The notes below the pieces were generated by a model. It saw only the letters and a program-made list of their open reading frames with translations, was not told the origin of the DNA and did no database searches. 29,119 bases of DNA from Macrostomum lignano (Eukaryota): positions 1-29,119 of the forward strand of contig NIVC01000798.1 of NCBI GenBank assembly GCA_002269645.1, in the 5' to 3' direction. How positions within the stretch are numbered: the stretch's first letter is position 1; each line of letters opens with the position of its first letter. The translations under genes and the position numbers were made by a program. Positions 5,359 to 29,119 of this stretch are shown one piece after another.

Positions 5359-5396
<38 letters not shown>

Positions 5397-7167: not shown

Positions 7168-7189
7168 GGGTAGTTTTGTGTACTAATGG

Positions 7190-7560: not shown

Positions 7561-8044
7561 AACCCGTGTTTGAATCGCGTAAATTTTTAGTTTGTTTTTG
7601 TTAAGCATTTTTAAAATTGTTCAAACAGTTACTGTATTTTAACTTTGTGTTTATAAATGTAAATGTATGAAAATAAAATCTTACTGATCGAATGTGTTGT
7701 TAGCGTTAAATATATAATTACAAAGGTTTAATTGTCTTCCATGCAGCAAAGTATCTTGCGCTTATTTGGCAACTCTGATTGTAGCGGTGAACATTAACGC
7801 TTCGCATTTTGATGCACAGCACGGACGGAGTCCAGACAGAATGACAAATGTGTTAACTGTTGGTTGGTGTCTGCCCAAACTGAGCTTAGCTGCGCAAATA
7901 TCATTAGCCAAATATGCTGTGCTCTTTCTAACTGCTAGGGTGGCCCTGCGCCTGAGTGGCACACTCAATTATTGCTTCTTAATTAAGTTCTTAATTTGGG
8001 TTTAATAAACAGGTCAAAGCCGTAAAAGTTACAAACATTAAAAC

Positions 8045-8163
8045 CATCGTCCCACCTTTGAAGACGACAGCGTCTTCATTTTACTAGTTGTGGGACGATG
8101 AGCCAGTAAGTAGTATAGAAAAAAATGCGAGCGAAGCGAGAATTTTTTTCTATACTGCTTACT
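8045..8163. other. Double-hairpin head of the unit (also 13132-13250, 18487-18604, 24638-24755)
   Basis: catcgtcccac (8045-55) / gtgggacgatg (8090-8100) enclose tgaagacg-acag-cgtcttca. agtaagtagtatagaaaaaaat (8105-26) / atttttttctatactgcttact (8142-63) pair at 21 of 22 positions around the loop gcgagcgaagcgaga. Confidence 0.9.
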
Positions 8164-8324
8164 TTTGCGAAATCGTCCCTGATAAGATGTGCAACAGATG
8201 TGACACACTAAAAATGACGTTTTTCAACTTTTAAACGCTGCCAATAAAAAACGGTACAACCGATTTACAAACAGTTTTTGCCAAAATGTGTCAAAGACCT
8301 AGCGCTATCGGATGCACAATAGTT

Positions 8325-8366
8325 GGTTGCTATGGCAACGCGTTTTGGTTGCCATGGCAACCAAAA
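8325..8366. promoter_or_regulatory. Perfect 24-bp palindrome containing an RFX X-box consensus, preceded by an imperfect copy (palindrome also at 13428-13451, 18779-18802, 24934-24957)
   Basis: ttttggttgccatggcaaccaaaa at 8343-8366 has core GTTGCCATGGCAAC; upstream ggttgctatggcaac. The palindrome is certain; regulatory function is not shown. Confidence 0.4.
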
Positions 8367-8559
8367 ACTGCGTTTTTTCGACTTTGTCAAAAACTTTGAT
8401 CTCAAAAAATAAGGATTGAGAATATGGCAGCGCTTAGCGAGTGGGCTCAGTAAACGCGGGCATTCAAACGCTACAATGATCAGAAATGGATTTTTTGATT
8501 GTACTTTAACTTTTAGGGTAAAAGTACAAAAAACGTGTTTTTTGAGGTCGAAAAATCGG

Positions 8560-10275
8560 CATTTTTTTCAACTTTGCCTCACCGCAGCGAAAAGGACGCG
8601 CGATAGCGCGGCCTTTGAGCTGCCTCATAGCGTCAATAACACCTGGGGCTGTTTGATGCGCTATAGTTTTTAGGGCTAAAATGTACTTTTCACATGGCTG
8701 CCTATCTGCTGTTTAAAAGTACAAATTTTTAGTGCACTTTTGTGAGGCCTATGGCGTCGAGATGGAAAACTTTATTTTTTAATATTTCTACACCAAATTA
8801 CTCAAATGGATGTCTTCTATTCGGAAACATTGAGATTTGGCCGATTGGGCCATCAATAACCTGCCTAGGTGCCAAAGAGTGCCTAAAAACGACATTTTCG
8901 AAAAATTGGGTCACGTTTTCAAAAAGTAGTCCCCAAAAATAAGGAAGCGTTTTATGCTACGGTGTTGAGACTTTAACACGACGTGTCAAACATTTGGAAA
9001 TTTGTTTTCCTGAATTTTCTAAGCATTGGACCTACCTGTGCTGAGCAGTGACCCGGAAACCAGGGAAAAAAGAGGCCGGGGGCTCTGCAGAAAATCAAAC
9101 GTTGTTAAGGAAATTTTTTTAAAATGGGGCGAATTTTTTCGAGTGTAGTGTCAAATTGTAGCCCATCGGATGCCCTTTTGAATGACATAAGACACTCCTG
9201 AAAAAACCCCTGTTAACAGGTACTTTTTACCTGTTAAGTGAAAAACGGCCCATTTTAGGGTACAAACTTTGAAGTCGAAAAATAAGAAATTTTGCGCACC
9301 GATTTTTCTGCATTTTCAATATTGTTTAGTCGAATAGCTAAAGTTTCACCGGTCATACGCCAATATGGCTGGAAAATTCGTATTTTTGAGCAAACTGCAT
9401 CTGATTTTTAAAAATGCAATTTTTCGGCCAATTTTTTGTACATGTTTTTCAACCTTGCCCGTACTGCAGCGAAAAGGACGCGCAATAGCGCGGCTTTTGA
9501 GCTGCTGCATAATGTAAACAACACCTGGGGCTTTTAGATGCGCTATAATTTTTTGGGCTAAAATGTACTTTTGACATGGCTGCCTATCTGCACTTTAAAA
9601 GTACAAACCGTTTGTGCACTTTAAAGAGGCTTATCCTATACAGATGCAAATCTTGATTTTTTCAATTTTTCAACCCAAATCACTCAAATGGATGTCTTTT
9701 ATTCGGAAATGCTGAGATCTGCTTGATTGGGCCATTCATTGCTGCTCTATATGGCTACAAGGGTCAAAAAGAGTGTTTTTGAAAATTTGGGTCACGTTTT
9801 CAAAAAGTAGTCTCCAAAAATAAGAAAGTGTTTTAAGCTACGGTGTTGAAATTTTAACAAAACGTGTCAAACATATGGAAATTTGTTTTCCTAAATTTTC
9901 TAAGCATTTGGACCTACCTGTGCGGAGCAGTGACCCGGAAACCGGGGAAAAAAGAGGCCGGGGGACTCGACCAAAAAAGCATATGTTGTTAAAGAAAAAT
10001 TTTTATTACTGGGCGAATTTTTTCGAATGTGGTGTCAAATTGTAGCCCATCGGATGCCCGTTCGAATGGCGCAAGACACTCTGGAAAAAATACCTGTTAA
10101 CAGGTACTTTTTACCTGTTAAGTGAAAAACGGCCCATTTGGGGTACAAACTTTGAAGTCGAAAAATAAGAAATTTTGCGCACCGATTTTTCTGCATTTTC
10201 AATATTGTTTAGTCGAATAGCTGAAGTTACACCGGTCATACGCCAATATGGCTGGAAAATTCGTATTTTTGAGAA
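8560..10275. repeat. ~882-bp tandem sub-duplication present only in unit A
   Basis: cagcgaaaaggacgcg at 8585 and 9467; caatatggctggaaaattcg at 9361 and 10244; units B-D carry one copy. Confidence 0.9.
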
Positions 10276-10679
10276 AATTGGCTCCGAATTTTGAGTAGGC
10301 CATTTTTGGGCAAATTTTGAGCATACTTTTGCTAATAACTCTGCATTGGCGAGACCTAGAGACTCAAGTTTGGTGTCTAAAAACAGCACTATGGATGCAT
10401 TATGCAGCTAAATCAGTTTTGAAAACTGATTCTTAGGTTAACAGGTCTTAATACCTGTTTGATTACCTGCCAGAACAGGTGAAAATTAATATTTTGGCGC
10501 CTAGCAGCCGAAAAATTTGTTGACATAATTTGAAAATGCATTGGATGAATGCGCCTTGATGTTATCTCTGTAACGACATGCGACTCGTATTTTTAGGTAG
10601 AAGCGTTGCGATGCAACGAGCAGAAATGTATGAAAAAGCAGAAAAAATGGTAGAAATGGCTGCTATTAGCGATATTCGA

Positions 10680-10797
10680 TATAAAATACGTGTACAATAG
10701 GCCAACTTAGTAAGCAATTTGTGGCTCAGTGGCAGAGTTAGTTTCTATATAATTGAGTGCTGCAGGGTTCGATTCCCAAGAGATCCGAAAAATTTTT
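10680..10797 (+). promoter_or_regulatory. tRNA-derived / SINE-head-like Pol III cassette, type 1 (unit A)
   Basis: TATAAAA 10680; A-box tggctcagtgg 10722-32 with pairable D-stem gctc/gagt; B-box ggttcgattcc 10766-76; T5 at 10793-97. No good acceptor stem. Confidence 0.6.
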
Positions 10798-11094
10798 AGT
10801 TTAAAGTTCTTTTAGAGCAAACAGTTTTTTAGTATTTTTATTTCTCTAACTATTATGTTTTTTATACAATTAAATTACATTTATTTAAATTTATTTTTCT
10901 TTTTATACGTATTTAAAGAGTAACAGTGAATCTTTTAGTGCGGCACGTATGATTGTTAGTGCAAAAAGTATATTACGATACATGTCGGCAAGCAAGTATT
11001 TGATGTCTGGTCGTTTGAAGGCTAGAATATAGTTGTAACATATTACAAAGACGTGTTTAGATGTGGGAAAAGTTCTCGAGGGGTGGTGGAGCGG

Positions 11095-13061
11095 TGGGGA
11101 GCCAGCCCCCCTTTACCACTAGACTAACTAATGCCAGCGGCTAGCCCCCACTATACCACTATACCACTAGACTAACTAATGCCAGGGGCGTGGGGGCGGC
11201 CAGCCCCCACTATACCACTAGACTAACTAATGCCAGGGGCGTGGGGGCGGCCAGCCCCCACTATACCACTAGACTAACTAATGCCAGGGGCGTGGGGGCG
11301 GCCAGCCCCCACTATACCACTAGACTAACTAATGCCAGGGGCGTGGGGGGCGGCTAGCCCCCACTATACCACTAGACTAACTAATGCCAGGGGCGTGGGG
11401 GCGGCCAGCCCCCACTATACCACTAGACTAACTAATGCCAGGGGCGTGGGGGCGGCCAGCCCCCCACTATACCACTAGACTAACTAATGCCAGGGGCGTG
11501 GGGGCGGCAGCCCCCCACTATACCACTAGACTAATAATGCCAGGGGCGTGGGGGCGGCCAGCCCCCACTATACCACTAGACTAACTAATGCCAGGGGCGT
11601 GGGGGGCGGCCAGCCCCCCACTATACCACTAGACTAACTAATGCCAGGGGCGTGGGGGGCGGCCAGCCCCCACTATACCACTAGACTAACTAATGCCAGG
11701 GGCGTGGGGGCGGCCAGCCCCCACTATACCACTAGACTAACTAATGCCAGGGGCGTGGGGGCGGCCAGCCCCCACTATACCACTAGACTAACTAATGCCA
11801 GGGGCGTGGGGGCGGCCAGCCCCCACTATACCACTAGACTAATAATGCCAGGGGCGTGGGGCGGCAGCCCCCACTATACCACTAGACTAACTAATGCCAG
11901 GGGCGTGGGGGCGGCGAGCCCCCCACTATACCACTAGACTAACTAATGCCAGGGGCGTGGGGGGCGGCCAGCCCCCCACTATACCACTAGACTAATAAAT
12001 GCCAGGGGCGTGGGGGGCGGCCAGCCCCCCACTATACCACTAGACTAACTAATGCCAGGGGCGTGGGGGGGCCAGCCCCCACTATACACTAGACTAACTA
12101 ATGCCAGGGGCGTGGGGGGCGGCCAGCCCCCCACTATACCACTAGACTAACTAATGCCAGGGGCGTGGGGGCGGCCAGCCCCCCACTATACCACTAGACT
12201 AACTAATGCCAGGGGCGTGGGGGGCGGCCAGCCCCCACTATACCACTAGACTAACTAATGCCAGGGGCGTGGGGGGCGGCCAGCCCCCCACTATACCACT
12301 AGACTAATAATGCCAGGGGCGTGGGGGGCGGCCAGCCCCCCACTATACCACTAGACTAACTAATGCCAGGGGCGTGGGGGGCGGCCAGCCCCCCACTATA
12401 CCACTAGACTAACTAATGCCAGGGGCGTGGGGGCGGCCAGCCCCCCTATACACTAGACTAACTAATGCCAGGGGCGTGGGGGCGGCCAGCCCCCCACTAT
12501 ACCACTTAGACTAACTAATGCCAGGGGCGTGGGGGGCGGCCAGCCCCCCACTATACCACTAGACTAACTAATGCCAGGGGCGTGGGGGGCGGCCAGCCCC
12601 CCACTATACCACAAGACTAACTAATGCCAGGGGCGTGGGGGGCGGCCAGCCTCCCACTATACCACTAGACTAACTAATGCCAGGGGCGTGGGGGGCGGCC
12701 AGCCCTCCACTATACCACTAGACTAACTAATGCCAGGGGCGTGGGGGGCGGCCAGCCCCCCACTATACCACTAGACTAATAAATGCCAGGGGCGTGGGGG
12801 GCGGCCAGCCCCCTACTATACCACTAGACTAATAAATGCCAGGGGCGTGGGGGGCGGCCAGCCCCCTACTATACCACTAGACTAACTAATGCCAGGGCGT
12901 GGGGGGCGGCCAGCCCCCACTATACCACTATACCACTAGACTAACTAATGCCAGGGGCGTGGGGGCGGCCAGCCCCCACTATACCACTTAGACTAACTAA
13001 TGCCAGGGCGGCCAGCCCCCCACTATACCACTAGACTAACTAATGCCAGGGGCGTGGGGGC
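11095..13061. repeat. 51-bp satellite array 1 (~38 copies)
   Basis: Monomer actataccactagactaactaatgccaggggcgtgggggcggccagccccc; length varies ~50-54 bp through G/C run length. Confidence 0.98.
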
Positions 13062-14866
13062 TTTTTAGCTCTCAATTTAGGTTAAATAAATAGATGTCAT
13101 AGCCATAAACAATAATTGACACAATATAAACCATCGTCCCACCTTTGAAGACGACAGCGTCTTCATTCACTAGTTGTGGGACGATGGAGCCAGTAAGTAG
13201 TATAGAAAAAAAGGCGAGCGAAGCGAGAATTTTTTTCTATACTGCTTACTTTTGCGAAATCGTCCCTGATAAGATGTGGGCCATATGTCATACACTAAAA
13301 TGACATTTTTCAACTTTTAAACGCTGCCAATAAAAAACGGTACGACCAATTTACAAACGGTTTTTGCCAAAATGCGTCAAAGACTTGGGCTACCAGAGCC
13401 GCAGTGCTTGGTTGCCATAGCGACGCGTTTTGGTTGCCATGGCAACCAAAAACCAAAAACTGCGTTTTTTCAACTTTTTCAAAAACTTTGATCTTAATTA
13501 CAGCGGCAGGAAATTATGGCAGCGCTTAGCGAGTGGGCTCAGTAAGCGCGGGCATTCAAACGCTACAATGATCCGAAATGGATTTTTTGATTGTACTTTA
13601 ACGTCTAGGCTAAAAGTACAAAAAACGTGTTTTTTGAGGTCGAAAATTTGGCATTTTTTTCAACTTTGCCTTACCGCAGCGAAAAGGACGCGCGATAGCG
13701 CGGCCTTTGAGCTGCCTCATAGCGTCAATAACACCTGGGGCTGTTTGATGCGCTATAGTTTTTAGGGCTAAAATGTACTTTTCACATGGCTGCCTATCTG
13801 CTGTTTAAAAGTACAAATTTTTAGTGCACTTTTGTGAGGCCTATGGCGTCGAGATGGAAAACTTTATTTTTGCTGTTTTGCATACCAAATAACTCAAATA
13901 GATGTCTTTTAATCGGAAACATCGAGATTTGGCCGATTGGGCCATCAATAACCTGCCCAGGTGCCAAAGAGTGCCTAAAAACGACATTTTCGAAAAATTG
14001 GGTCACGTTTTTTAAAAGTAGTCCCAAAAAATAAGAAAGTTTTATGCTACGGTGTTGAGACTTTAACACAACGTGTCAAACATATGGAAATTTGTTTTCC
14101 TGAATTTTCTAAGCATTTGGACCTACCTGTGCGGAGCAGTGACCCAGAAACCGGGAAAAAAGAGGCCGGGGGCTCTGCAGAAAATCAGACGTTGTTAAGA
14201 AAAATTTTTTAAAATGGGGCGAATTTTTTCGAGTGTAGTGTCAAATTGTAGCCCATCGGATGCCCTTTTGAATGACATAAGACACTCCTGAAAAAACCCC
14301 TGTTAACAGGTACTTTTTACCTGTTAAGTGAAAAACGGCCCATTTGGGGGTACAAACTTTTGGAAAAATAAGAAATTTTGCGCACCGAATTTTCAATATT
14401 GTTTAGAATAGCTTTTCACCGGTCATACGCCAATATGGCTGGAAAATTCGTATTTTTGAGAAAATTGGCTCCGAATTTTGAGTAGGCCATTTTCGGGCAA
14501 ATTTTGAGCATACTTTTGCTAATAACTCTGCATTGGCGAGACCTAGAGACTCAAGTTTGGTGTCTAAAAACAGCACTATGGATGCATTATGCAGCTAAAT
14601 CAGTTTTGAAAACTGATTCTTAGGTTAACAGGTCTTAATACCTGTTTGATTACCTGTCAGAACAGGTGAAAATTAATATTTTGGCGCCTAGCAGCCGAAA
14701 AATTTGTTGACATAATTTGAAAATGCATTGGATGAATGCGCCTTGATGTTATCTCTGTAACGACATGCGACTCGTATTTTTAGGTAGAAGCGTTGCGATG
14801 CAACGAGCAGAAATGTATGAAAAAGCAGCAAAAATGGTAGAAATGGCTGTTATTAGCGATATTCGA

Positions 14867-14984
14867 TATAAAATACGTGTACTATAGGCCAACTTAGTAA
14901 GCAATTTGTGGCTCAGTGGCAGAGTTAGTTTCCATATAATTGAGTCCTGCAGGGTTTGATTCCCAAGAGATCCGAAAAATTTTT
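14867..14984 (+). promoter_or_regulatory. Pol III-like cassette, type 1 (unit B)
   Basis: TATAAAA 14867; A-box 14909-19; B-box ggtttgattcc 14953-63 with one C>T change; T5 at 14980-84. Confidence 0.5.
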
Positions 14985-15281
14985 AGTTTAAAGTTCTTTT
15001 AGAGCAAACAGATTTTTAGTATTTTTATTTCTCTAACTATTATGTTTTTTATACAATTAAATTACATTTATTTAAATTTATTTTTCTTTTTATACGTATT
15101 TAAAGAGTAACAGAGAATCTTTTAGTGCGGCACATATGATTGTTAGTGCAAAAAGTATATTACGATACATGTCGGCAAGCAAGTATTTGATGTCTGGTCG
15201 TTTGAAGGCTAGAATATAGTTGTAACATATTACAAAGACGTGTTTAGATGTGGGAAAAGTTCTCGAGGGGTGGTGGAGCGG

Positions 15282-18200
15282 TGGGGGAGCCAGGACCCCC
15301 TTTACCACTAGACTAACTAATGCCAGGGGCGTGGGGGGCGGCCAGCCCCCCACTATACCACTAGACTAACTAATGCCAGGGGCGTGGGGGCGGCCAGCCC
15401 CCCACTATACCACTAGACTAACTAATGCCAGGGGCGTGGGGGGCGGCCAGCCCCCCACTATACCACTAGACTAACTAATGCCAGGGGCGTGGGGGCGGCC
15501 AGCCCCCCACTATACCACTAGACTAACTAATGCCAGGGGCGTGGGGGCGGCCAGCCCCCCACTATACCACTAGACTAACTAATGCCAGGGGCGTGGGGGG
15601 CGGCCAGCCCCCCACTATACCACTAGACTAACTAATGCCAGGGGCGTGGGGGCGGCAGCCCCCCACTATACCACTAGACTAACTAATGCCAGGGGCGTGG
15701 GGGCGGCCAGCCCCCCACTATACCACTAGACTAACTAATGCCAGGGGCGTGGGGGCGGCCAGCCCCCCACTATACACTAGACTAACTAATGCCAGGGCGT
15801 GGGGGCGGCCAGCCCCCACTATACCACTAGACTAACTAATGCCAGGGGCGTGGGGGCGGCCAGCCCCCACTATACCACTAGACTAACTAAATGCCAGGGG
15901 CGTGGGGGCGGCCAGCCCCCACTATACCACTAGACTAATAATGCCAGGGGCGTGGGGGGCGGCCAGCCCCCCACTATACCACTAGACTAACTAATGCCAG
16001 GGGCGTGGGGGGCGGCCAGCCCCCCACTATACCACTAGACTAACTAATGCCAGGGGCGTGGGGGGCGGCCAGCCCCCCACTATACACTAGACTAACTAAT
16101 GCCAGGGGCGTGGGGGCGGCCAGCCCCCCACTATACCACTAGACTAACTAATGCCAGGGGCGTGGGGGCGGCCAGCCCCCACTATACCACTAGACTAATA
16201 ATGCCAGGGGCGTGGGGGCGGCCAGCCCCCACTATACCACTAGACTAACTAATGCCAGGGGCGTGGGGGGCGAGCCCCCCACTATACCACTAGACTAACT
16301 AATGCCAGGGGCGTGGGGGGCGGCCAGCCCCCACTATACCACTAGACTAATAATGCCAGGGGCGTGGGGGCGGCCAGCCCCCCACTATACCACTAGACTA
16401 ATAATGCCAGGGGCGTGGGGGGCGGCCAGCCCCCCACTATACCACTAGACTAACTAATGCCAGGGGCGTGGGGGGCGGCCAGCCCCCACTATACCACTAG
16501 ACTAACTAATGCCAGGGGCGTGGGGGCGGCCAGCCCCCCCCACTATACCACTAGACTAACTAATGCCAGGGGCGTGGGGGGCGGCCAGCCCCCACTATAC
16601 CACTAGACTAACTAATGCCAGGGGCGTGGGGGGCGGCCAGCCCCCACTATACCACTAGACTAACTAATGCCAGGGGCGTGGGGGCGGCAGCCCCCCACTA
16701 TACCACTAGACTAACTAATGCCAGGGGCGTGGGGGCGGCCAGCCCCCACTATACCACTAGACTAACTAATGCCAGGGGCGTGGGGGGCGGCCAGCCCCCC
16801 ACTATACCACACTAGACTAACTAATGCCAGGGGCGTGGGGCGGCCAGCCCCCCACTATACCACTAGACTAACTAATGCCAGGGGCGTGGGGGCGGCCAGC
16901 CCCCACTATACCACTAGACTAACTAATGCCAGGGGCGTGGGGGGCGGCCAGCCCCCACTATACCACTAGACTAACTAATGCCAGGGGCGTGGGGGGCGGC
17001 CAGCCCCCCACTATACCACTATACCACTAGACTAACTAATGCCAGGGGCGTGGGGGGCGGCCAGCCCCCCACTATACCACTAGACTAACTAATGCCAGGG
17101 GCGTGGGGGCGGCCAGCCCCCCACTATACCACTAGACTAACTAATGCCAGGGGCGTGGGGGCGGCCAGCCCCACTATACCACTAGACTAACTAATGCCAG
17201 GGGCGTGGGGGCGGCCAGCCCCCCACTATACCACTAGACTAACTAATGCCAGGGGCGTGGGGGGCGGCCAGCCCCCCACTATACCACTAGACTAACTAAT
17301 GCCAGGGGCGTGGGGGGCGGCCAGCCCCCACTATACCACTAGACTAACTAATGCCAGGGGCGTGGGGGCGGCAGCCCCCACTATACCACTAGACTAATAA
17401 TGCCAGGGGCGTGGGGGGCGGCCAGCCCCCCACTATACCACTAGACTAACTAATGCCAGGGGCGTGGGGGGCGGCCAGCCCCCCACTATACCACTAGACT
17501 AACTAATGCCAGGGGCGTGGGGGGCGGCCAGCCCCCCACACTATACCACTAGACTAACTAATGCCAGGGGCGTGGGGGCGGCCAGCCCCCACTATACCAC
17601 TAGACTAACTAATGCCAGGGGCGTGGGGGGCGGCCAGCCCCCCACTATACCACTAGACTAACTAATGCCAGGGGCGTGGGGGGCGGCCAGCCCCCCACTA
17701 TACCACTAGACTAACTAATGCCAGGGGCGTGGGGGCGGCCAGCCCCCACTATACCACTAGACTAACTAATGCCAGGGGCGTGGGGGGCGGCCAGCCCCCC
17801 ACTATACCACTAGACTAACTAATGCCAGGGGCGTGGGGGGCGGCCAGCCCCCACTATACCACTAGACTAACTAATGCCAGGGGCGTGGGGGGCGGCCAGC
17901 CCCCCACTATACCACTAGACTAACTAATGCCAGGGGCGTGGGGGGCGGCCAGCCCCCACTATACCACTAGACTAACTAATGCCAGGGGCGTGGGGGCGGC
18001 CAGCCCCCCACTATACCACTAGACTAACTAATGCCAGGGGCGTGGGGGGCGGCCAGCCCCCACTATACCACTAGACTAACTAATGCCAGGGGCGTGGGGG
18101 GCGGCCAGCCCCCACTATACCACTAGACTAACTAATGCCAGGGGCGTGGGGGCGGCCAGCCCCACTATACCACTATACCACTAGACTAACTAATGCCAGG

Positions 18201-18416
18201 GGCGTGGGGGGCGGCCAGCCCCCCACTATACCACTAGACTAACTAATGCCAGGGGCGTGGGGGCGGCCAGCCCCACTATACCACTAGACTAACTAATGCC
18301 AGGGGCGTGGGGGCGGCCAGCCCCCACTATACCACTAGACTAACTAATGCCAGGGGCGTGGGGGCGGCCAGCCCCACTATACCACTAGACTAACTAATGC
18401 CAGGGGCGTGGGGGGC
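15282..18416. repeat. 51-bp satellite array 2 (~60 copies)
   Basis: Same monomer as array 1; ends at gtggggggc-tttttagctctc. Confidence 0.98.
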
Positions 18417-20215: not shown

Positions 20216-20333
20216 TATAAACGGCGTGCACTGTAGAGCTTCGCTTAAGTAAGAGATGGATCGGGGCCGAAGGCAGTTGCTTTGTAAATGGCCTAAACAC
20301 GGGTTCGAATCCCAAGTGGGCCAAGTTTTTTTT
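20216..20333 (+). promoter_or_regulatory. Pol III-like cassette, type 2 (unit C)
   Basis: TATAAA 20216; degenerate A-box-position sequence tggatcggggc 20257; consensus B-box ggttcgaatcc 20302-12; T8 at 20326-33. Confidence 0.5.
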
Positions 20334-20599
20334 ATATTTAATTTTTTAGCAGGAACGGATTTATTAGTATTTTCAATTCTCTTTCACTTGAATATAATTT
20401 AATATTGATTGTTTAATTTTCCTTTCCTTCTATACCTTATTAAAGAGTAAGAGTGAAGCTGAAAGTGCGGCACAGATGATTTGTTAGTGCAGAAAGAATA
20501 TTACGATACATATCGGCAAGTATCATGTGTTGCGCGGTCGCCAAAGGCTTACAAGCAGTTTTAGCATGCTAAAAAGATGTGTTAGAGGTGGGAAAAGTT

Positions 20600-20905
20600 G
20601 CGGAGGGGTGGGGTGGGGGAGCGGGGGTGTGGGGGCGGCAGCCCCCACGTTACGCAAACCCCACAACAACAACCACCCTCCCCAACAACAATGTGCGGGA
20701 GGGGTGGGGGAGCGGGGGTGTGGGGGCGGCAGCCCCCACGTTACGCAAACCCCACAACAACAACCACCCTCCCCAACAACAACGCGCGGGAGGGGTGGGG
20801 GAGCGGGGGTGTGGGGGCGGCAGCCCCCACGTTACGCAAACCCCACAACAACAACCACCCTCCCCAACAACAACGCGCGGGAGGGGTGGGGAGCGGGGGT
20901 GTGGG
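20600..20905. repeat. 91-bp G-rich/C-rich minisatellite, 3 copies plus a partial (unit C)
   Basis: gcccccacgttacgcaaaccccac starts at 20641, 20732 and 20823; contains gggaggggtgggggagcgggggtgtggggg. Confidence 0.95.
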
Positions 20906-23900
20906 GGCGGCCAGCCCTCCACTATACCACTAGACAAACTAATGCCAGGGGCGTGGGGCGGCCAACTCCCCACTATACCACTAGAGAAACTAATGCCAGG
21001 GGTGTGGGGGCGGCCAGCCCCCACTATACCACTAGACTAACTAATGCCAGTGGCGTGGGGGGCGGCCAGCCCCCCACTATACCACTAGACTAACTAATGC
21101 CAGGGGCGTGGGGGGCGGCCAGCCCCCACTATACCACTAGAGAAACTAATGCCAGGGGCGTGGGGGGCGGCCAGCCCCCCACTATACCACTAGACTAACT
21201 AATGCCAGGGGCGTGGGGGGCGGCCAGCCCCCACTATACCACTAGACTAACTAATGCCAGGGGCGTGGGGGGCGGCCAGCCCCCACTATACCACTAGACT
21301 AACTAATGCCAGGGGCGTGGGGGGCGGCCAGCCCCCCACTATACCACTAGACTAACTAATGCCAGGGGCGTGGGGGCGGCCAGCCCCCACTATACCACTA
21401 GACTAACTAATGCCAGGGGCGTGGGGGGCGGCAGCCCCCACTATACCACTAGACTAACTAATGCCAGGGGCGTGGGGGCGGCCAGCCCCCACTATACCAC
21501 TAGACTAACTAATGCCAGGGGCGTGGGGGCGGCCAGCCCCCACTATACCACTAGACTAACTAATGCCAGGGGCGTGGGGGCGGCCAGCCCCCACTATACC
21601 ACTAGACTAACTAATGCCAGGGGTGTGGGGGCGGCCAGCCCCCACTATACCACTATACCACTAGACTAACTAATGCCAGGGGCGTGGGGGGCGGCCAGCC
21701 CCCACTATACCACTAGACTAACTAATGCCAGGGGCGTGGGGGGCGGCAGCCCCCACTATACCACTAGACTAACTAATGCCAGGGGCGTGGGGGGCGGCCA
21801 GCCCCCACTATACCACTAGACTAACTAATGCCAGGGGCGTGGGGGTGGCCAGCCCCCACTATACCACTAGACTAACTAATGCCAGGGGCGTGGGGGCGGC
21901 CAGCCCCCACTATACCACTAGACTAACTAATGCCAGGGGCGTGGGGGCGGCCAGCCCCCACTATACCACTAGACTAACTAATGCCAGGGGCGTGGGGGGC
22001 GGCCAGCCCCCACTATACCACTAGACTAACTAATGCCAGGGGCGTGGGGGGCGGCCAGCCCCCACTATACCACTAGACTAACTAATGCCAGGGGCGTGGG
22101 GGCGGCCAGCCCCCCACTATACCACTAGACTAACTAATGCCAGGGGCGTGGGGGGCGGCCAGCCCCCCACTATACCACTAGACTAACTAATGCCAGGGGC
22201 GTGGGGGGCGGCCAGCCCCCACTATACCACTAGACTAACTAATGCCAGGGGCGTGGGGGTGGCCAGCCCCCCACTATACCACTAGACTAACTAATGCCAG
22301 GGGCGTGGGGGGGCAGCCCCCCACTATACCACTAGACTAACTAATGCCAGGGGCGTGGGGGGCGGCCAGCCCCCCACTATACCACTAGACTAACTAATGC
22401 CAGGGGCGTGGGGGCGGCCAGCCCCCCACTATACCACTAGACTAACTAATGCCAGGGGCGTGGGGGCGGCCAGCCCCCACTATACCACTAGACTAACTAA
22501 TGCCAGGGGCGTGGGGGGCGGCCAGCCCCCACTATACCACTAGACTAACTAATGCCAGGGGCGTGGGGGGCGGCAGCCCCCCACTATACCACTATACCAC
22601 TAGACTAACTAATGCCAGGGGCGTGGGGGGCGGCCAGCCCCCCACTATACCACTAGACTAACTAATGCCAGGGGCGTGGGGGGCGGCAGCCCCCCACTAT
22701 ACCACTAGACTAACTAATGCCAGGGGCGTGGGGGGCGGCCAGCCCCCACTATACCACTAGACTAACTAATGCCAGGGGCGTGGGGGCGGCCAGCCCCCAC
22801 TATACCACTAGACTAACTAATGCCAGGGGCGTGGGGGGCGGCCAGCCCCCACTATACCACTAGACTAACTAATGCCAGGGGCGTGGGGGCGGCCAGCCCC
22901 CCACTATACCACTAGACTAACTAATGCCAGGGGCGTGGGGGCGGCAGCCCCCACTATACCACTTAGACTAACTAATGCCAGGGGCGTGGGGGGCGGCCAG
23001 CCCCCCACTATACCACTAGACTAACTAATGCCAGGGGCGTGGGGGCGGCCAGCCCCCACTATACCACTAGACTAACTAATGCCAGGGGCGTGGGGGGCGG
23101 CCAGCCCCCTACTATACCACTAGACTAACTAATGCCAGGGTGTGGGGGCGGCCAGCCCCCCTATACCACTATACCACTAGACTAACTAATGCCAGGGGCG
23201 TGGGGGCGGCCAGCCCCCCACTATACCACTAGACTAACTAATGCCAGGGGCGTGGGGGGCGGCCAGCCCCCACTATACCACTAGACTAATAATGCCAGGG
23301 GCGTGGGGGGCGGCCAGCCCCCACTATACCACTAGACTAACTAATGCCAGGGGCGTGGGGGTGGCCAGCCCCCCACTATACCACTAGACTAACTAATGCC
23401 AGGGGCGTGGGGGGCGGCCAGCCCCCACTATACCACTTAGACTAACTAATGCCAGGGGCGTGGGGGGCGGCCAGCCCCCCACTATACCACTAGACTAACT
23501 AATGCCAGGGGCGTGGGGGGCGGCCAGCCCCCACTATACCACTAGACTAACTAATGCCAGGGGCGTGGGGGGCGGCCAGCCCCCACTATACCACTAGACT
23601 AACTAATGCCAGGGGCGTGGGGGGCGGCCAGCCCCCCACTATACCACTAGACTAACTAATGCCAGGGGCGTGGGGGCGGCCAGCCCCCCACTATACCACT
23701 AGACTAACTAATGCCAGGGGCGTGGGGGCGGCCAGCCCCCACTATACCACTAGACTAACTAATGCCAGGGGCGTGGGGGTGGCCAGCCCCCACTATACCA
23801 CTAGACTAACTAATGCCAGGGGCGTGGGGGGTGGCCAGCCCCCACTATACCACTAGACTAACTAATGCCAGGGGCGTGGGGGGCGGCCAGCCCCCCACTA

Positions 23901-24567
23901 TACCACTAGACTAACTAATGCCAGGGGCGTGGGGGCGGCCAGCCCCCACTATACCACTAGACTAACTAATGCCAGGGGCGTGGGGGGCGGCTAGCCCCCC
24001 ACTATACCACTATACCACTAGACTAACTAATGCCAGGGGCGTGGGGGGCGGCCAGCCCCCCACTATACCACTAGACTAACTAATGCCAGGGGCGTGGGGG
24101 GCGGCCAGCCCCCCACTATACCACTAGACTAACTAATGCCAGGGGCGTGGGGGGCGGCCAGCCCCCACTATACCACTAGACTAACTAATGCCAGGGGCGT
24201 GGGGGCGGCCAGCCCCCACTATACCACTAGACTAACTAATGCCAGGGGCGTGGGGGGTGGCCAGCCCCCCACTATACCACTTAGACTAACTAATGCCAGG
24301 GGCGTGGGGGGCGGCAGCCCCCACTATACCACTAGACTAATAAATGCCAGGGGCGTGGGGGCGGCCAGCCCCCACTATACCACTAGACTAACAAATGCCA
24401 GGGGCGTGGGGGCGGCCAGCCCCCACTATACCACTAGACTAACTAATGCCAGGGGCGTGGGGGCGGCCAGCCCCCACTATACCACTAGACTAACTAATGC
24501 CAGGGGCGTGGGGGGCGGCCAGTCCCCACTATACCACTAGACTAACTAATGCCAGGGCGTGGGGGGC
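20901..24567. repeat. 51-bp satellite array 3 (~70 copies)
   Basis: Same monomer; the first few copies are diverged (gacaaact, gagaaact, gccagtggcg). Confidence 0.98.
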
Positions 24568-26387
24568 TTTTTAGCTCTCAATTTAGGTTAAATAAATAGA
24601 TGTCATAGCCATAAACAATAATGGACACAATATAAACCATCGTCCCACCTTTGAAGACGACAGCGTCTTCATTCACTAGTTGTGGGACGATGAGCCAGTA
24701 AGTAGTATAGAAAAAAAGGCGAGCGAAGCGAGAATTTTTTTCTATGGTGCTTACTTTTGCGAAATCGTCCCTGATAAGATGTAACGTGGTTGCACACACT
24801 AAAAATGACGTTTTTCAACTTTTAAACGCTGCCAATAAAAAACGGTACGACCAATTTACAAACGGTTTTTGCCAAAATGTGTCAAAGACCTAGCGCTATC
24901 GGATGCACAATAGTTGGTTGCCATGGCAATGCGTTTTGGTTGCCATGGCAACCAAAAACTGCGTTTTTTCGACTTTGTCAAAAACTTTGATCTCAAAAAA
25001 TAAGGATTGAGAATATGGCAGCGCTTAGCGGGCTGGCTCAGTAAACGCGGGCATTCGAACGCTACAATGATCAGAAATGGATTTTTTTATTGTACTTTAA
25101 CGTCTAGGCTAAAAGTACAAAAAACGTGTTTTTTGAGGTCGAAAAATTGGCATTTTTTCCAACTTTGCCTCACCGCAGCGAAAAGGACGCGCGATAGCGC
25201 GGCCTTTGAGCTGCCTCATAGCGTCAATAACACCTGGGGCTGTTTGATGCGCTATAGTTTTTAGGCTAAAATGTACTTTTCACATGGCTGCCTATCTGCA
25301 CTTTAAAAGTACAAATTTTTAGTGCACTTTTGTGAGGCCTATCTCGTCGAGATTAAAAACTTTATTTTTTAATATTTCTACACCAAATTACTCAAATAGA
25401 TGTCTTCTATTCGGAAACATCGAGATTTGGCTTATTGGGCCATCAATAACCTGCCCAGGTGCCAAAGAGTGCCTAAAAACGACATTTTCAAAAAATTGGG
25501 TCACGTTTTAAAAAAGTAGTCCTCAAACTTGAAAAAGTGTTTTATGCTACAGTGGTGAGACTTTAACACGATGTGTCAAACATATGGAAATTTGTTTTCC
25601 TAAATTTTCTAAGCATTTGGACCTACCTGTGCTGAGCAGTGACCCGAAAACCAGGGAAAAAAGAGGCCGGGGGGCACTGCAGAAAATCAGACGTTGTTAA
25701 GGAAATTTTTTTAAAATGGGGCAAAGTTTTTCGAGTATGGCGTCAAATTGTAGCCCATCGGATGCCCTTTTGAATGACATAAGACACTCCTGAAAAAACC
25801 CTGTTAACAGGTACTTTTTACCTGTTAAGTGAAAAACGGCCCATTTTGGGGTACAAACTTTGAAGTGGAAAAATAAGAAATTTTGCGCACCGATTTTTCT
25901 GCATTTTCAATATTGTTTAGTCGAATAGATGAAGTTACACCGGTCATACGCCAATATGGCTGGAAAATTCGTATTTTTGAGAAAATTGGCTCCGAATTTT
26001 GAGAAGGCTATTTTTGGGCAAATTTTGAGCATACTTTTGCTAATAACTCTGCATTGGCAAGGCCTAGAGACTCAATTTTGGTGTCTAAAAACAGCACTAT
26101 GGATGCACTGTGCAACTAAATTAGTTTTGAAAACTGATTCTTAAGTTAATAGGTCTTAATACCTGTTTGAATACCTGTCAGAACAGGTGAAAATGCACAA
26201 TTTGGCGCCTAGGAGGCGTAAAATTTGTTGACATACTTTAAAAATGCATTAGATGAATGCGCCTTGATGTTATCTCTGTAACGACATGCGACTCGCATTT
26301 TTAGATGAAGGCGCTGCGATGCAGCGAGCAGAAATGTATGAAAAAGCAGCAAAAATCGTAAAAGTGGCTACCATAGGGAATATTCGA

Positions 26388-26505
26388 TATAAACGGCGTG
26401 CACTGTAGAGCTTCGCTTAAGTAAGAGATGGATCGGGGCCGAAGGCAGTTGCTTTGTAAATGGCCTAAACACGGGTTCGAATCCCAAGTGGGCCAAGTTT
26501 TTTTT
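26388..26505 (+). promoter_or_regulatory. Pol III-like cassette, type 2 (unit D)
   Basis: TATAAA 26388; B-box ggttcgaatcc 26474-84; T8 at 26498-505; matches unit C. Confidence 0.5.
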
Positions 26506-26771
26506 ATATTTAATTTTTTAGCAGGAACGGATTTATTAGTATTTTCAATTCTCTTTCACTTGAATATAATTTAATATTGATTGTTTAATTTTCCTTTCCT
26601 TCTATACCTTATTAAAGAGTAAGAGTGAAGCTGAAAGTGCGGCACAGATGATTTGTTAGTGCAGAAAGAATATTACGATACATATCGGCAAGTATCATGT
26701 GTTGCGCGGTCGCCAAAGGCTTACAAGCAGTTTTAGCATGCTAAAAAGATGTGTTAGAGGTGGGAAAAGTT

Positions 26772-27072
26772 GCGGAGGGGTGGGGTGGGGGAGCGGGGGT
26801 GTGGGGGCGGCAGCCCCCACGTTACGCAAACCCCACAACAACAACCACCCTCCCCAACAACAATGTGCGGGAGGGGTGGGGGAGCGGGGGTGTGGGGGCG
26901 GCAGCCCCCACGTTACGCAAACCCCACAACAACAACCACCCTCCCCAACAACAACGCGCGGGAGGGGTGGGGGAGCGGGGGTGTGGGGGCGGCAGCCCCC
27001 ACGTTACGCAAACCCCACAACAACAACCACCCTCCCCAACAACACGGGAGGGGTGGGGGAGCGGGGGTGTGG
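26772..27072. repeat. 91-bp minisatellite, 3 copies (unit D)
   Basis: gcccccacgttacgc at 26813, 26904 and 26995; the third copy has a short deletion (aacacgggag). Confidence 0.95.
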
Positions 27073-29119
27073 GGCGGCCAGCCTCCACTATACCACTAGA
27101 CAAACTAATGCCAGGGGCGTGGGGCGGCCAACTCCCACTATACCACTAGAGAAACTAATGCCAGGGGTGTGGGGGCGGCCAGCCCCCACTATACCACTAG
27201 ACTAACTAATGCCAGTGGCGTGGGGGGCGGCCAGCCCCCACTATACCACTAGACTAACTAATGCCAGGGGCGTGGGGGCGGCCAGCCCCCACTATACCAC
27301 TAGAGAAACTAATGCCAGGGCGTGGGGGCGGCCAGCCCCCCACTATACCACTAGACTAATAATGCCAGGGGCGTGGGGGGCGGCCAGCCCCCTACTATAC
27401 CACTAGACTAACTAATGCCAGGGGCGTGGGGGCGGCCAGCCCCCCACTATACCACTAGACTAACTAATGCCAGGGGCGTGGGGGCGGCCAGCCCCCACTA
27501 TACCACTAGACTAACTAATGCCAGGGGCGTGGGGGGTGGCCAGCCCCCACTATACCACTAGACTAACTAATGCCAGGGGCGTGGGGGGCGGCAAGCCCCC
27601 ACTATACCACTTAGACTAACTAATGCCAGGGGCGTGGGGGGCGGCCAGCCCCCACTATACCACTAGACTAACTAATGCCAGGGGCGTGGGGGGCGGCCAG
27701 CCCCCACTATACCACTAGACTAACTAATGCCAGGGGCGTGGGGGCGGCCAGCCCCCTACTATACCACTAGACTAACTAATGCCAGGGTGTGGGGGCGGCC
27801 AGCCCCCACTATACCACTATACCACTAGACTAACTAATGCCAGGGGCGTGGGGGGCGGCCAGCCCCCACTATACCACTTAGACTAACTAATGCCAGGGGC
27901 GTGGGGGGCGGCGAGCCCCCCACTATACCACTAGACTAATAATGCCAGGGGCGTGGGGCGGCCAGCCCCCCACTATACCACTAGACTAACTAATGCCAGG
28001 GGCGTGGGGGGTGGCCAGCCCCCACTATACCACTAGACTAACTAATGCCAGGGGCGTGGGGGGCGGCCAGCCCCCACTATACCACTTAGACTAACTAATG
28101 CCAGGGGCGTGGGGGCGGCCAGCCCCCACTATACCACTAGACTAACTAATGCCAGGGGCGTGGGGGGCGGCCAGCCCCCCACTATACCACTAGACTAACT
28201 AATGCCAGGGGCGTGGGGGCGGCCAGCCCCCACTATACCACTAGACTAACTAATGCCAGGGGCGTGGGGGGCGGCCAGCCCCCACTATACCACTAGACTA
28301 ACTAATGCCAGGGGCGTGGGGGCGGCCAGCCCCCACTATACCACTAGACTAACTAATGCCAGGGGCGTGGGGGGCGGCCAGCCCCCACTATACCACTAGA
28401 CTAACTAATGCCAGGGGCGTGGGGGTGGCCAGCCCCCACTATACCACTAGACTAACTAATGCCAGGGGCGTGGGGGCGGCCAGCCCCCCACTATACCACT
28501 AGACTAACTAATGCCAGGGGCGTGGGGGGCGGCCAGCCCCCCACTATACCACTAGACTAACTAATGCCAGGGGCGTGGGGGGCGGCTAGCCCCCACTACT
28601 ATACCACTAGACTAACTAATGCCAGGGGCGTGGGGGGCGGCCAGCCCCCACTATACCACTAGACTAACTAATGCCAGGGGCGTGGGGGCGGCAGCCCCCA
28701 CTATACCACTAGACTAACTAATGCCAGGGCGTGGGGGCGGCCAGCCCCCCCTATACCACTAGACTAACTAATGCCAGGGGCGTGGGGGCGGCCAGCCCCA
28801 CTATACCACTAGACTAACTAATGCCAGGGGCGTGGGGGGCCAGCCCCCCACTATACCACTTAGACTAACTAATGCCAGGGCGTGGGGGCGGCCAGCCCCC
28901 ACTATACCACTAGACTAATAATGCCAGGGGCTGGGGCGGCCAGCCCCCCACTATACCACTAGACTAACTAATGCCAGGGCGTGGGGGGCGGCCAGCCCCC
29001 ACTATACCACTAGACTAACTAATGCCAGGGCGTGGGGGGCGGCCAGCCCCCACTATACCACTAGACTAACTAATGCCAGGGGCGTGGGGGCGGCAGCCCC
29101 CACTATACCACTAGACTAA
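27069..29119. repeat. 51-bp satellite array 4 (at least ~40 copies, runs off the window)
   Basis: Same monomer continues to the last base. Confidence 0.98.

What the first reader, a model, noticed from the sequence alone, without database searches (positions are those of the whole stretch)
8041..29119. Nested system: a ~2-kb structured module alternating with variable-length 51-bp satellite arrays, four times head-to-tail
Seen: constant module order (double hairpin, X-box palindrome, palindrome-rich body, Pol III-like cassette, satellite, ~70-bp spacer), satellite blocks of ~2.0, 3.1, 3.7 and >2.0 kb, and a sharp left edge exactly at the first hairpin. Established: non-autonomous Helitrons/Helentrons (DINE-1/HINE type) form tandem copies and their internal tandem repeats seed satellites. 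Inference: a satellite-generating rolling-circle element caught in tandem, or a heterochromatin-edge macrosatellite. I do not recognise the family.
Basis: partly seen in the sequence, partly recalled or inferred. Interest (0 to 1): 0.75.

Follow-up and report, generated by a model that had tools for sequence, protein, structure and literature searches.

The report
Composite tandem repeat with nested satellite
A non-coding 5-6 kb unit, made of a 2.2-kb hairpin-rich module with a tRNA-like relic plus a block of 51-53-bp GC-rich repeats, is repeated head-to-tail at least four times; it behaves like an ordinary large tandem repeat reshuffled by recombination, and none of the defining marks of a rolling-circle transposon could be shown.

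Summary
The nested layout is real. Four head-to-tail units start at 7982, 13058, 18413 and 24564. Each has a ~2.2-kb non-coding module: spacer, double hairpin, two X-box palindromes, a palindrome-rich body and a tRNA-like A/B-box relic. A 51-53-bp GC-rich hairpin satellite follows (1.95, 3.1, 3.7 and >2.06 kb).

- The left edge is at ~7982, not at the hairpin at 8041. A diverged spacer copy lies there.
- Unit 1 carries an 880-bp internal duplication.
- Modules come in two subtypes. Units 3 and 4 have an extra 91-bp x3.5 array.

The units are mosaics of variant blocks. Neighbouring units are the most alike. Satellites 3 and 4 share their first five variant monomers and are colinear apart from indels. 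This points to whole-unit duplication, gene conversion and in-array expansion or contraction, that is, a macrosatellite-like array.

Helitron, Helentron and TIR hallmarks were tested and not found at the one visible edge or at the unit junctions. Hairpin-plus-CTRR matches occur at the rate expected by chance. There is no similarity to DINE-1 cores.

No relative was found in the papers, the metagenome, viral and prokaryote collections, or the protein databases. Dispersal and empty sites could not be tested. Interest is moderate to low.

The parts
7982..13057 (+). Unit 1: module 7982-11105 with an internal duplication, then satellite S1 ~11106-13057 (1.95 kb)
   Evidence: BLAST 7983-9435 and 9441-11105 against module 2; TRF; spacer homology
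7982..8040 (+). Diverged copy of the ~70-bp spacer; the true left edge of the array
   Evidence: Local alignment score 41, against a shuffle maximum of 32 and a real-sequence maximum of 22; nothing homologous further left
8560..10318 (+). Internal tandem duplication in unit 1 (8560-9435 and 9441-10318, 85% identical). The junction lies in a T-rich stretch
13058..18412 (+). Unit 2 (subtype A): module 13058-15295, then satellite S2 15296-18412 (3.1 kb)
13058..13130 (+). Spacer between the satellite end and the first hairpin. It is 99-100% identical in units 2-4
13131..13187 (.). Hairpin 1: 12-bp arms CCATCGTCCCAC/GTGGGACGATGG enclosing an 8-bp-stem inner hairpin at 13146-13165. Homologues at 8044-8101, 18486-18542 and 24637-24693
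13192..13250 (.). Hairpin 2: 21-bp stem, 17-nt loop. Homologues at 8105-8163, 18546-18604 and 24697-24755. Unit 4 has two uncompensated changes in the right arm
13259..13266 (+). Third copy of ATCGTCCC. The motif occurs in the order +, -, + around the hairpins in every unit
   Evidence: 12 matches against 0.36 expected
13408..13451 (.). Pair of X-box-like palindromes: GTTGCCATAGCGAC and a perfect GTTGCCATGGCAAC inside a 24-nt palindrome. The pair is present in all four modules
14903..14984 (+). tRNA-like relic: A box 14909-14919, B box 14953-14963, T5 14980-14984. Homologues have B boxes at 10766, 20302 and 26474. B-type copies have T8 but no A box
   Evidence: no Rfam tRNA hit
15240..15300 (+). 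G-rich 3' end of the module, which grades into a diverged first satellite monomer
   Evidence: sequence; alignment
15296..18412 (+). Satellite S2: ~60 monomers of 51-53 bp. Each has a 9-bp GC stem (GTGGGGGGC ggcca GCCCCCCAC) plus an AT-rich half
18413..24563 (+). Unit 3 (subtype B): module 18413-20605, 91-bp x3.5 array 20606-20922, then satellite S3 to 24563 (3.7 kb)
24564..29119 (+). Unit 4 (subtype B), cut by the window end: module 24564-26777, 91-bp x3.5 array 26778-27088, then satellite S4 27063 to beyond 29119

Best explanation
This is a non-coding composite tandem repeat, a macrosatellite-like array. Each 5-6 kb unit has a 2.2-kb AT-rich, palindrome-rich module that carries a decayed tRNA-type Pol III relic. 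After the module comes a GC-rich 51-53-bp hairpin minisatellite, which appears to have grown out of the module's own G-rich 3' end.

The array grows and changes by duplication of whole units (module plus satellite) through unequal exchange between misaligned units. Gene conversion spreads variant blocks between units. Each satellite block also expands and contracts on its own.

What is shown: the structure, the mosaicism, the nearest-neighbour similarity, the colinear satellites and the absence of coding capacity.

What is inferred: the recombination mechanism, and the satellite's origin from the module's 3' end.

The module may descend from a mobile element, but nothing here shows that it is or was mobile.
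For: 1. The units are real, distinct copies. Identity per 100-column window of the module alignment ranges from 54% to 100% depending on segment and pair.
2. The units are mosaics. Site patterns change by region: unit-1-private changes in the spacer, unit-2-private changes at 13306-13553, a third variant in the second copy of unit 1's duplication at 13554-14296, and a clean 1,2|3,4 split at 14527-15273. A single-event concatemer followed by neutral drift would not give this.
3. Neighbours are the most alike. Units 3 and 4 are 96.5% identical over 7.8 kb, satellites included.
4. After homopolymer compression, 120 of 190 monomers are identical. S3 and S4 begin with the same five variant monomers, share a private variant, and are colinear apart from indels. 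Another variant is enriched in S1/S2. So whole units were copied first, and the arrays changed length afterwards.
5. The edge copy of the spacer is much more diverged than the inner copies (72% against 99-100% over the first 100 alignment columns). This is expected where homogenisation does not reach the end of an array.
6. Unit 1 has an internal 880-bp duplication with its junction in a T-rich stretch.
7. The 52-bp and 91-bp repeats share a core (GGGGGYGKGGGGGCGGC(C)AGCCCCCAC) with each other. The module's G-rich end resembles it weakly.
8. No ORF is conserved between subtypes. The longest module ORF has no protein homologue and no Pfam match.
Against: The left edge of the array coincides, to within a few bases, with the satellite/spacer junction of the inner units. 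The chance of that for a random breakpoint is about 0.2%. It suggests a defined unit end, as a mobile element would have.

The hairpin cluster with three ATCGTCCC motifs, and the conserved islands inside the otherwise diverged 3' part (B box, a ~44-nt block), hint at sequence-specific function or recognition. Pure recombination does not explain these.

Only four units and one edge are visible. The genome, the array's right end and its copy number elsewhere are unknown.
Confidence: 0.58

Rival explanations
1. The array is a head-to-tail concatemer of a non-autonomous rolling-circle transposon (Helentron/HINE-like or Helitron-like). Its internal tandem array has grown into a satellite. Failed termination during rolling-circle transposition concatenated the units, which later diverged.
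For: - HINEs are described as a left module with a 5' subTIR plus a complementary inverted repeat, a central tandem array, and a ~60-bp right module with a 3' subTIR and palindrome. Tandem repeats can fill ~50% of an element, and whole elements can lie in tandem (PMC7492417; PMC4067079).
- Here a tandem array fills 40-60% of each unit and a 70-bp piece follows it.
- The motif ATCGTCCC occurs in the order +, -, +, with the inverted copy followed by a strong palindrome and a T-run. If the element ends are placed just after hairpin 2, this loosely mimics '3' subTIR, palindrome, T-rich end | 5' subTIR'.
- The unit begins with a T5 run.
- The array edge coincides with a unit boundary.
- A Helitron-type RepHel pseudogene lies on the same strand at 1-878. 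Its closest relative sits directly after an ORF with Helitron_like_N and PIF1.
- Every satellite monomer has a 23-nt GC palindrome followed 11 nt later by the end of a CTAG.
Against: - There is no A|TC at the left edge and no CTRR|TC at the junctions (sequences).
- The unit's left 40-90 nt have no inverted copy anywhere in the unit above chance.
- The only inverted motif shared between the putative ends is 8 nt, against the 12-15 nt required. It also requires the array to begin with a 5'-truncated element.
- Hairpin+CTRR hits occur at about the number expected by chance: ~12.5% per palindrome, about 2 expected, 2 families seen outside the satellite.
- There is no similarity to DINE-1 cores, nor between the Helitron-bearing flank and the module.
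- The block-wise mosaic and the 25-46% divergence of the 3' part do not fit one concatemer event.
Confidence: 0.22
2. The array is a functional locus rather than junk. Each unit would carry protein-binding sites: a B box for TFIIIC, paired X-box palindromes for an RFX factor, and a hairpin cluster. These would act as a boundary or organiser between satellite blocks, or the units would be transcribed (Pol III small RNA, hairpin RNA or piRNA source).
For: - The B box plus T-run is kept in all four units, although the surrounding ~100 bp are only ~64% identical between subtypes and the A box is lost in subtype B.
- The perfect X-box is invariant in all four modules.
- The hairpin region is 96-100% identical across units.
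- Conserved islands lie in a diverged background.
Against: - No binding or expression data can be obtained here.
- Conservation between copies of one array can come from gene conversion alone.
- No Rfam family matches.
- The cassette RNA does not fold better than shuffles (z = 0.3 and 0.6).
- Unit 4 has two uncompensated changes in hairpin 2.
Confidence: 0.08
3. The layout is an assembly artefact: one or two real units were inflated into four by misassembly of long noisy reads.
For: Monomer length varies mainly in G/C homopolymers, as expected from long-read error. Units 3 and 4 are nearly identical over the last kilobase of the module.
Against: Every unit differs from the others by private substitutions, indels, an 880-bp duplication, a subtype switch and a different satellite variant order. 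A collapse or duplication artefact would give identical copies.
Confidence: 0.05

Closest known systems
Helentron-associated interspersed elements (HINE; DINE-1, Cg_HINE of Crassostrea gigas, HINE-Cq of Culex)
   Same: Non-coding. A 5' hairpin is formed by a short motif and its inverted copy. An internal tandem array can make up about half of the element, and a short conserved piece follows the array. Ends are T-rich, and tandem arrangement is possible (PMC7492417; PMC4067079).
   Different: There is no 12-15-bp subTIR pair at opposite ends and no 3' subTIR in the 70-bp piece. No microsatellite lies inside the module. The module is 2.2 kb and the unit 5-6 kb. There is no similarity to DINE-1 cores. 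Dispersal and TT empty sites were not testable.
Canonical non-autonomous Helitrons in tandem arrays
   Same: Head-to-tail copies, hairpins, and a Helitron RepHel pseudogene nearby. Hairpin+CTAG motifs are present.
   Different: The unit edge and junctions lack 5'-TC and CTRR-3'. The hairpin+CTRR motifs are no more frequent than chance.
Macrosatellites and complex tandem repeats with embedded short repeats (for example human D4Z4/DXZ4; own knowledge)
   Same: Kilobase-scale units lie head-to-tail. Each unit contains GC-rich short-repeat blocks and protein-binding motifs. The unit copies vary and are homogenised by unequal exchange and conversion.
   Different: No sequence relation is expected or was tested. 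Here the embedded satellite is as long as or longer than the unique part, and its length varies two-fold between adjacent units.
Xenopus oocyte-type 5S DNA and tandem tRNA gene clusters (own knowledge)
   Same: A Pol III-type gene or pseudogene sits in each tandem unit, and the spacer is built of a variable number of short tandem repeats.
   Different: Here the Pol III element is a decayed relic that no Rfam model recognises. The repeat is GC-rich rather than AT-rich.
Complex satellite plus Helitron-fragment chromosome ends of Drosophila biarmipes and other Diptera (PMC6581046)
   Same: Satellite blocks are interleaved with non-coding, transposon-like pieces and maintained by recombination. 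The window also holds a Helitron fragment.
   Different: In that case the fragments are randomly oriented and the SAR satellite is AT-rich. Here the order is strictly head-to-tail and the satellite is GC-rich. The chromosomal position is unknown.

Membership tests
Canonical Helitron (non-autonomous) | 5'-TC terminus preceded by host A | tested here: not met
   Left edge ...GCTTCTTAATTAAGT|TCTTAATTT. No A|TC lies within ~15 nt of the edge. Inner junctions read ...GGGGGGCTTTTTAGC|TCTC.
Canonical Helitron (non-autonomous) | 3'-CTRR terminus with a 16-20-nt palindrome ~11 nt upstream, followed by host T or, in tandem copies, by the next 5'-TC | tested here: inconclusive
   Such motifs exist: the hp1 inner hairpin followed by TTCACTAG|T, a minus-strand palindrome at 14791-14805, and every satellite monomer. 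None lies at a unit junction or is followed by TC. The number found equals the chance expectation.
Canonical Helitron (non-autonomous) | Dispersed copies with A/T empty sites and no target duplication | not testable with these tools
   The source genome is not available. Scans of papers, metagenome, viral and prokaryote collections found nothing related.
Helentron / HINE / DINE-1 | 12-15-bp subterminal inverted repeats: 5' one 2-4 nt from the end, 3' one 38-60 nt from the end (PMC4067079) | tested here: not met
   The reverse complement of the unit's first 40-90 nt has no match in the unit above shuffles. The only alternative framing gives an 8-nt motif (ATCGTCCC/GGGACGAT) and needs a truncated first element.
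Helentron / HINE / DINE-1 | Short palindrome near the 3' end, T-rich ends, insertion within TT | tested here: inconclusive
   Strong palindromes and T-runs exist. Which position is the element's end cannot be fixed, and empty sites are unavailable.
Helentron / HINE / DINE-1 | Central tandem repeats and/or microsatellite between two conserved modules | tested here: met
   A 51-53-bp array lies between the module and the 70-bp spacer in every unit. This feature is not specific to the family.
Helentron / HINE / DINE-1 | Sequence similarity to the DINE-1 core | tested here: not met
   BLAST of 7 of the DINE-1 consensus sequences for the 12 Drosophila species (supplement of PMC2374699) matched only the (GTCT)n microsatellite at 5338-5435 in the flank.
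TIR transposon / MITE | Terminal inverted repeats with a target-site duplication | tested here: not met
   There is no inverted copy of the left end. The right end of the array is outside the window, so a duplication cannot be checked.
tRNA gene or tRNA-derived SINE | Cloverleaf recognised by a tRNA model | tested here: not met
   ARAGORN at its default setting found 0 genes. Rfam gave no hit at the gathering score or at E<=10 on 121-126 nt. A weak cloverleaf appears only at ARAGORN ps80, where the flank also gives false calls.
tRNA gene or tRNA-derived SINE | Internal A and B boxes at tRNA spacing, followed by a T-run | tested here: met
   In A-type units: TGGCTCAGTGG, then GGTT(C/T)GATTCC 44 nt later, then T5. 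In B-type units: B box plus T8 but no A box.
Macrosatellite / complex tandem repeat | Kilobase-scale non-coding units head-to-tail, with copy-to-copy variation shaped by unequal exchange and conversion | tested here: met
   Four units of 5.1, 5.4, 6.2 and >4.6 kb. Block mosaic, nearest-neighbour similarity, a diverged edge and colinear satellites with indels. No conserved ORF.
rRNA / 5S / snRNA gene arrays | A recognisable structural RNA gene in each unit | tested here: not met
   No Rfam match at gathering scores anywhere in the window.

The most novel reading that the evidence does not exclude
The module is a so far undescribed non-autonomous rolling-circle element. Its recognition region is the hairpin cluster with three ATCGTCCC sites, and its hairpin-plus-CTAG termination-like signal has been amplified into the 52-bp satellite. 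The array would then record satellite birth from a transposon terminus. Alternatively, the conserved B box and paired X-boxes make each unit a TFIIIC/RFX-bound boundary between satellite blocks.
Probability: 0.12. Interest if true: 0.6.

Novelty: new member of a known kind. Interest (0 to 1): 0.35.

Why it matters
Composite arrays like this show how satellites arise and spread. Here the satellite starts at the module's own G-rich end. Its length changes two-fold between neighbouring units. The variant order shows that whole units were copied before the arrays changed size.

If genome-wide mapping showed dispersed copies with fixed ends, this would be a new transposon family caught seeding a satellite. 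Without that, it is a well-documented but ordinary example of a complex tandem repeat, probably in repeat-rich chromatin of an animal genome without strong CpG depletion.

Tried and rejected
External searches that led nowhere:
- Full-text search for six exact sequence strings from the module and satellite: 0 papers. X-box string plus 'transposable element': 0 papers.
- Exact-pattern scans. Hairpin pattern in metagenomes: 0. Satellite pattern in metagenomes: 2 hits, both chance matches inside unrelated coding-like sequence. Viral contigs: 0 for three patterns. Prokaryote genomes: 0.
- Protein route to other copies. The longest module ORF had no homologue. The satellite's only open frame had none. 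An exact look-up of a flank ORF found nothing on record.
- Supplement searches for the motifs: no occurrences in the ten files held for PMC4067079; no supplement files are held for PMC13553610.

Ideas tested and rejected:
- A degenerate satellite monomer or module remnant left of 7982.
- A link between the Helitron-bearing flank and the module; only AT-rich 12-mers are shared.
- A Helitron 3' end similar to the satellite in the related locus L003.
- A higher-order repeat in the satellite. The TRF periods of 103 and 157 score no better than 52.
- tRNA identity of the satellite's minus strand. It is called only at a relaxed ARAGORN threshold, with a poor cloverleaf.
- A 9-nt 'AGATGTGGG' direct repeat flanking the body as a target duplication. 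It is not kept in the other units.

Full report
**Observation**

The window splits into a 'normal' left part (1-7981, GC ~0.40) and a strictly periodic right part. In the right part, AT-rich stretches (GC ~0.38) alternate with GC-rich stretches (GC ~0.63).

Tandem Repeats Finder reports four long arrays with a 52-53-bp period and 93-95% matches: 11156-13060, 15296-18416, 20895-24567 and 27063-29119.

BLAST of the stretch between the first two arrays (13061-15295) finds it again at 18416-20622 and 24567-26794 (86-87%). It also finds it, in two overlapping pieces, at 7983-9435 and 9441-11105 (90-91%).

There are therefore four head-to-tail units. They start at 7982, 13058, 18413 and 24564, and the last is cut by the window end.

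Monomers are 51, 52 or 53 bp in nearly equal numbers. They differ mostly in the length of G and C runs. After homopolymer compression, 120 of 190 monomers are identical. Much of that length noise may be long-read error.

**Anatomy of the module** (unit 2 coordinates)

- A 73-bp spacer (13058-13130) follows the last, truncated monomer.
- Hairpin 1 (13131-13187) has perfect 12-bp arms and an inner 8-bp-stem hairpin.
- Hairpin 2 (13192-13250) has a 21-bp stem. As single-stranded DNA the pair folds at -36 kcal/mol, z = -7.25 against shuffles.
- The octamer ATCGTCCC occurs three times around the hairpins, in the order +, -, +, in every unit. That is 12 matches against 0.36 expected.
- Two X-box-like palindromes lie 22 bp apart. 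One is a perfect GTTGCCATGGCAAC in all four modules.
- The body is rich in palindromes: 8 perfect inverted repeats with stem >=9, against 0.5 in shuffles and 1-2 in flank windows. AACAGGT/ACCTGTT pairs are over-represented, with 23 matches against 4.8 expected.
- No reading frame is kept between subtypes. The longest ORF has no Pfam match and no homologue.
- Near the 3' end lies a tRNA-like relic. In units 1 and 2 it has a consensus A box (TGGCTCAGTGG), a B box 44 nt downstream and a T5 run. In units 3 and 4 it has a perfect B box (GGTTCGAATCC) and T8, but no A box.
- The relic is not a tRNA by any model. ARAGORN at default settings finds none. Rfam finds nothing even at E<=10 on 121 nt. A weak cloverleaf appears only at a relaxed ARAGORN threshold that also makes calls in the flank.
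- After ~250 AT-rich bases the module ends in a G-rich stretch that grades into a diverged first monomer.
- Each satellite monomer has a 9-bp GC stem (GTGGGGGGC ggcca GCCCCCCAC) and an AT-rich half.

1. The left edge is not at the first hairpin (8041). A diverged copy of the spacer lies at 7982-8040. Its local alignment score is 41, against a maximum of 32 in 2000 shuffles and 22 in 312 real-sequence controls. Left of ~7982 there is no satellite remnant and no module homology. The array therefore begins, to within a few bases, where the inner units pass from satellite to spacer.
2. Module 1 is 3.1 kb because ~880 bp are duplicated in tandem (8560-9435 and 9441-10318, 85%). The junction lies in a T-rich stretch.
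3. There are two subtypes: A (the 3' part of unit 1, and unit 2) and B (units 3 and 4). The last ~450 bp are only 54-75% identical between them, while most of the rest is 76-99%.
4. B units have an extra 91-bp x3.5 array between module and satellite (20606-20922, 26778-27088). It shares the GC-hairpin core with the 52-bp monomer. It holds the only G-quadruplex motifs in the window.

**How the array evolves**

Identity between units changes block by block, and so do the site patterns:
- unit-1-private changes in the spacer;
- 27 unit-2-private changes at 13306-13553, where unit 1 groups with units 3 and 4;
- 89 private changes in the second copy of unit 1's duplication at 13554-14296, which amounts to a third variant type;
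- a clean 1,2|3,4 split from 14527 to the end of the module.

One concatemer event followed by drift cannot give this pattern. Repeated exchange or conversion within a larger pool of units can.

Neighbours are the most alike. Units 3 and 4 align at 96.5% over 7.8 kb, satellites included.

The satellites carry the same signal. S3 and S4 open with the same five variant monomers, share a private variant (8 copies, none in S1/S2), and are colinear apart from blocks of inserted or deleted monomers. Another variant is enriched in S1/S2. Whole units, module plus satellite, were therefore duplicated first, and the satellite blocks then expanded or contracted.

The much higher divergence of the edge spacer is what an array edge outside the reach of homogenisation would show: 72% over the first 100 alignment columns, against 99-100% among the inner copies.

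These are the signatures of a macrosatellite-type array. The mechanism itself (unequal exchange, conversion, slippage) is inferred, not observed.

**Tests of the transposon reading**

The defining features were taken from PMC4067079 and PMC7492417.

Canonical Helitron:
- No A|TC lies at the array edge, and no CTRR|TC lies at the junctions.
- A scan for GC-containing palindromes followed within 8-15 nt by CTRR found hits only inside the repeat. These were the inner hairpin of hairpin 1 (TGAAGACGACAGCGTCTTCA + TTCACTAG, then T), a minus-strand palindrome at 14791-14805, and every satellite monomer, where the CTAG ends 11 nt after the palindrome.
- With ~12.5% chance per palindrome and about 14 palindrome-strand trials, about two hits are expected. 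This is therefore not evidence.

Helentron/HINE:
- The reverse complement of the unit's first 40-90 nt has no match in the unit above shuffles, so there is no 12-15-bp subTIR pair.
- An alternative framing places the element end just after hairpin 2. That gives '3' inverted motif, palindrome, T-run | 5' motif', but with only 8 shared nucleotides. It also needs a truncated first element.
- DINE-1 consensus sequences of Drosophila species match only a (GTCT)n microsatellite in the flank.

Other points:
- TIRs are absent.
- The flank holds the C-terminal part of a Helitron RepHel gene, broken by a frameshift (1-878, + strand). It matches Pif1_2B_dom (above Pfam's threshold) and UvrD_C_2 (just below it). 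Its best relatives are 43% identical, and the closest sits directly after an ORF with Helitron_like_N and PIF1.
- This shows that Helitrons lived in this genome. However, the flank and the module share nothing but AT-rich 12-mers.
- Whether the module exists as dispersed solo copies with empty sites is the decisive test, and it cannot be done here. No relative was found in papers, metagenomes, viral contigs, prokaryote genomes or protein collections.

**What remains unexplained**

- The array edge coincides with a unit boundary. For a random breakpoint the chance is about 10 in 5300.
- The hairpin cluster has three ATCGTCCC sites and is 96-100% conserved.
- The B box with its T-run, and several ~40-nt islands, persist inside the otherwise strongly diverged 3' part.

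Conversion can explain conservation within an array. These points still leave room for a defined element end or for protein-binding function. The cassette RNA folds no better than shuffles, and hairpin 2 of unit 4 has two uncompensated changes. Both argue against strong structural constraint.

**Source organism**

The organism is unknown. CpG observed/expected is 0.8-1.05 outside the satellite, so there is little germline CpG methylation. A short intron-like gap in a CCHC zinc-knuckle ORF, CAG/CAA-rich coding-like sequence and the repeat content suggest an insect, perhaps a fly. This is a guess.

**Verdict**

The either/or interpretation is half right. The data fit a composite macrosatellite shaped by recombination. 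The rolling-circle element reading fails every defining feature that could be tested and stays open only because dispersal could not be examined. The family is new to every collection searched, but the kind of structure is known.

- Best explanation: 0.58
- Rolling-circle concatemer: 0.22
- Functional boundary or RNA locus: 0.08
- Assembly artefact: 0.05
- Interest: 0.35

Noticed in passing
window 1-878 (+): C-terminal part of a Helitron-type RepHel helicase, broken by a frameshift near 480-534. It matches Pif1_2B_dom (above Pfam's threshold) and UvrD_C_2 (just below it). Best relatives are 43% identical, and the closest lies directly after an ORF with Helitron_like_N and PIF1. The gene runs off the left end of the window.
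   Followed up: partly
window 978-999 and 1324-1345: A 22-nt inverted repeat (95% complementary) lies 324 nt apart, just downstream of the helicase stop codon. It could be the ends of a small inserted element or a long stem.
   Followed up: partly
window 2711-2972: A 37-bp minisatellite of about 7 copies, 75% matches.
   Followed up: no
window 3358-4293: A 326-bp tandem repeat, 2.8 copies at 96%. Each copy carries a 70-residue ORF with no Pfam match; its last codons read across a GTAAGC splice-donor-like site. It may be a duplicated exon.
   Followed up: partly
window 4370-4759 (-): Frameshifted fragment of a mariner transposase. A 27-residue stretch matches Mos1 transposase and SETMAR (E about 2e-5). 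Pfam did not detect it.
   Followed up: yes
window 5338-5435: A (GTCT)n microsatellite of ~24 copies. It is the only part of the window that matches DINE-1 consensus sequences, and only through their own GTCY microsatellite. No DINE-1 core lies next to it.
   Followed up: yes
window 5897-6028 and 7289-7560: A (CT)65 tract and a long AG-rich tract lie in inverted orientation to each other, ~1.4 kb apart. They bracket the G-rich/zinc-knuckle region.
   Followed up: no
window 6665-7167 (+): A glycine/arginine-rich ORF built on a 6- to 21-bp repeat is followed, after a ~90-nt intron-like gap (GTAAGT...TTGTAG), by a CCHC zinc knuckle (Pfam zf-CCHC, 22.6 bits, above the cut-off). It may be a gag-like or RNA-binding gene fragment.
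   Followed up: partly
window 20605-20907 and 26777-27074 (+): The only G-quadruplex motifs in the window (four per unit) lie in the 91-bp arrays of units 3 and 4, all on the + strand. There are none in the 52-bp satellite and none on the minus strand.
   Followed up: partly
window 14305-14325, 14627-14667 and homologues: Pairs of AACAGGT/ACCTGTT half-sites form short palindromes at two places in every module. There are 23 matches in the window against 4.8 expected.
   Followed up: partly
satellite arrays 11106-29119: Most differences between monomers are one-base changes in G or C runs. This looks like long-read homopolymer error rather than true variation, so the exact monomer length (51, 52 or 53) should not be trusted.
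   Followed up: partly
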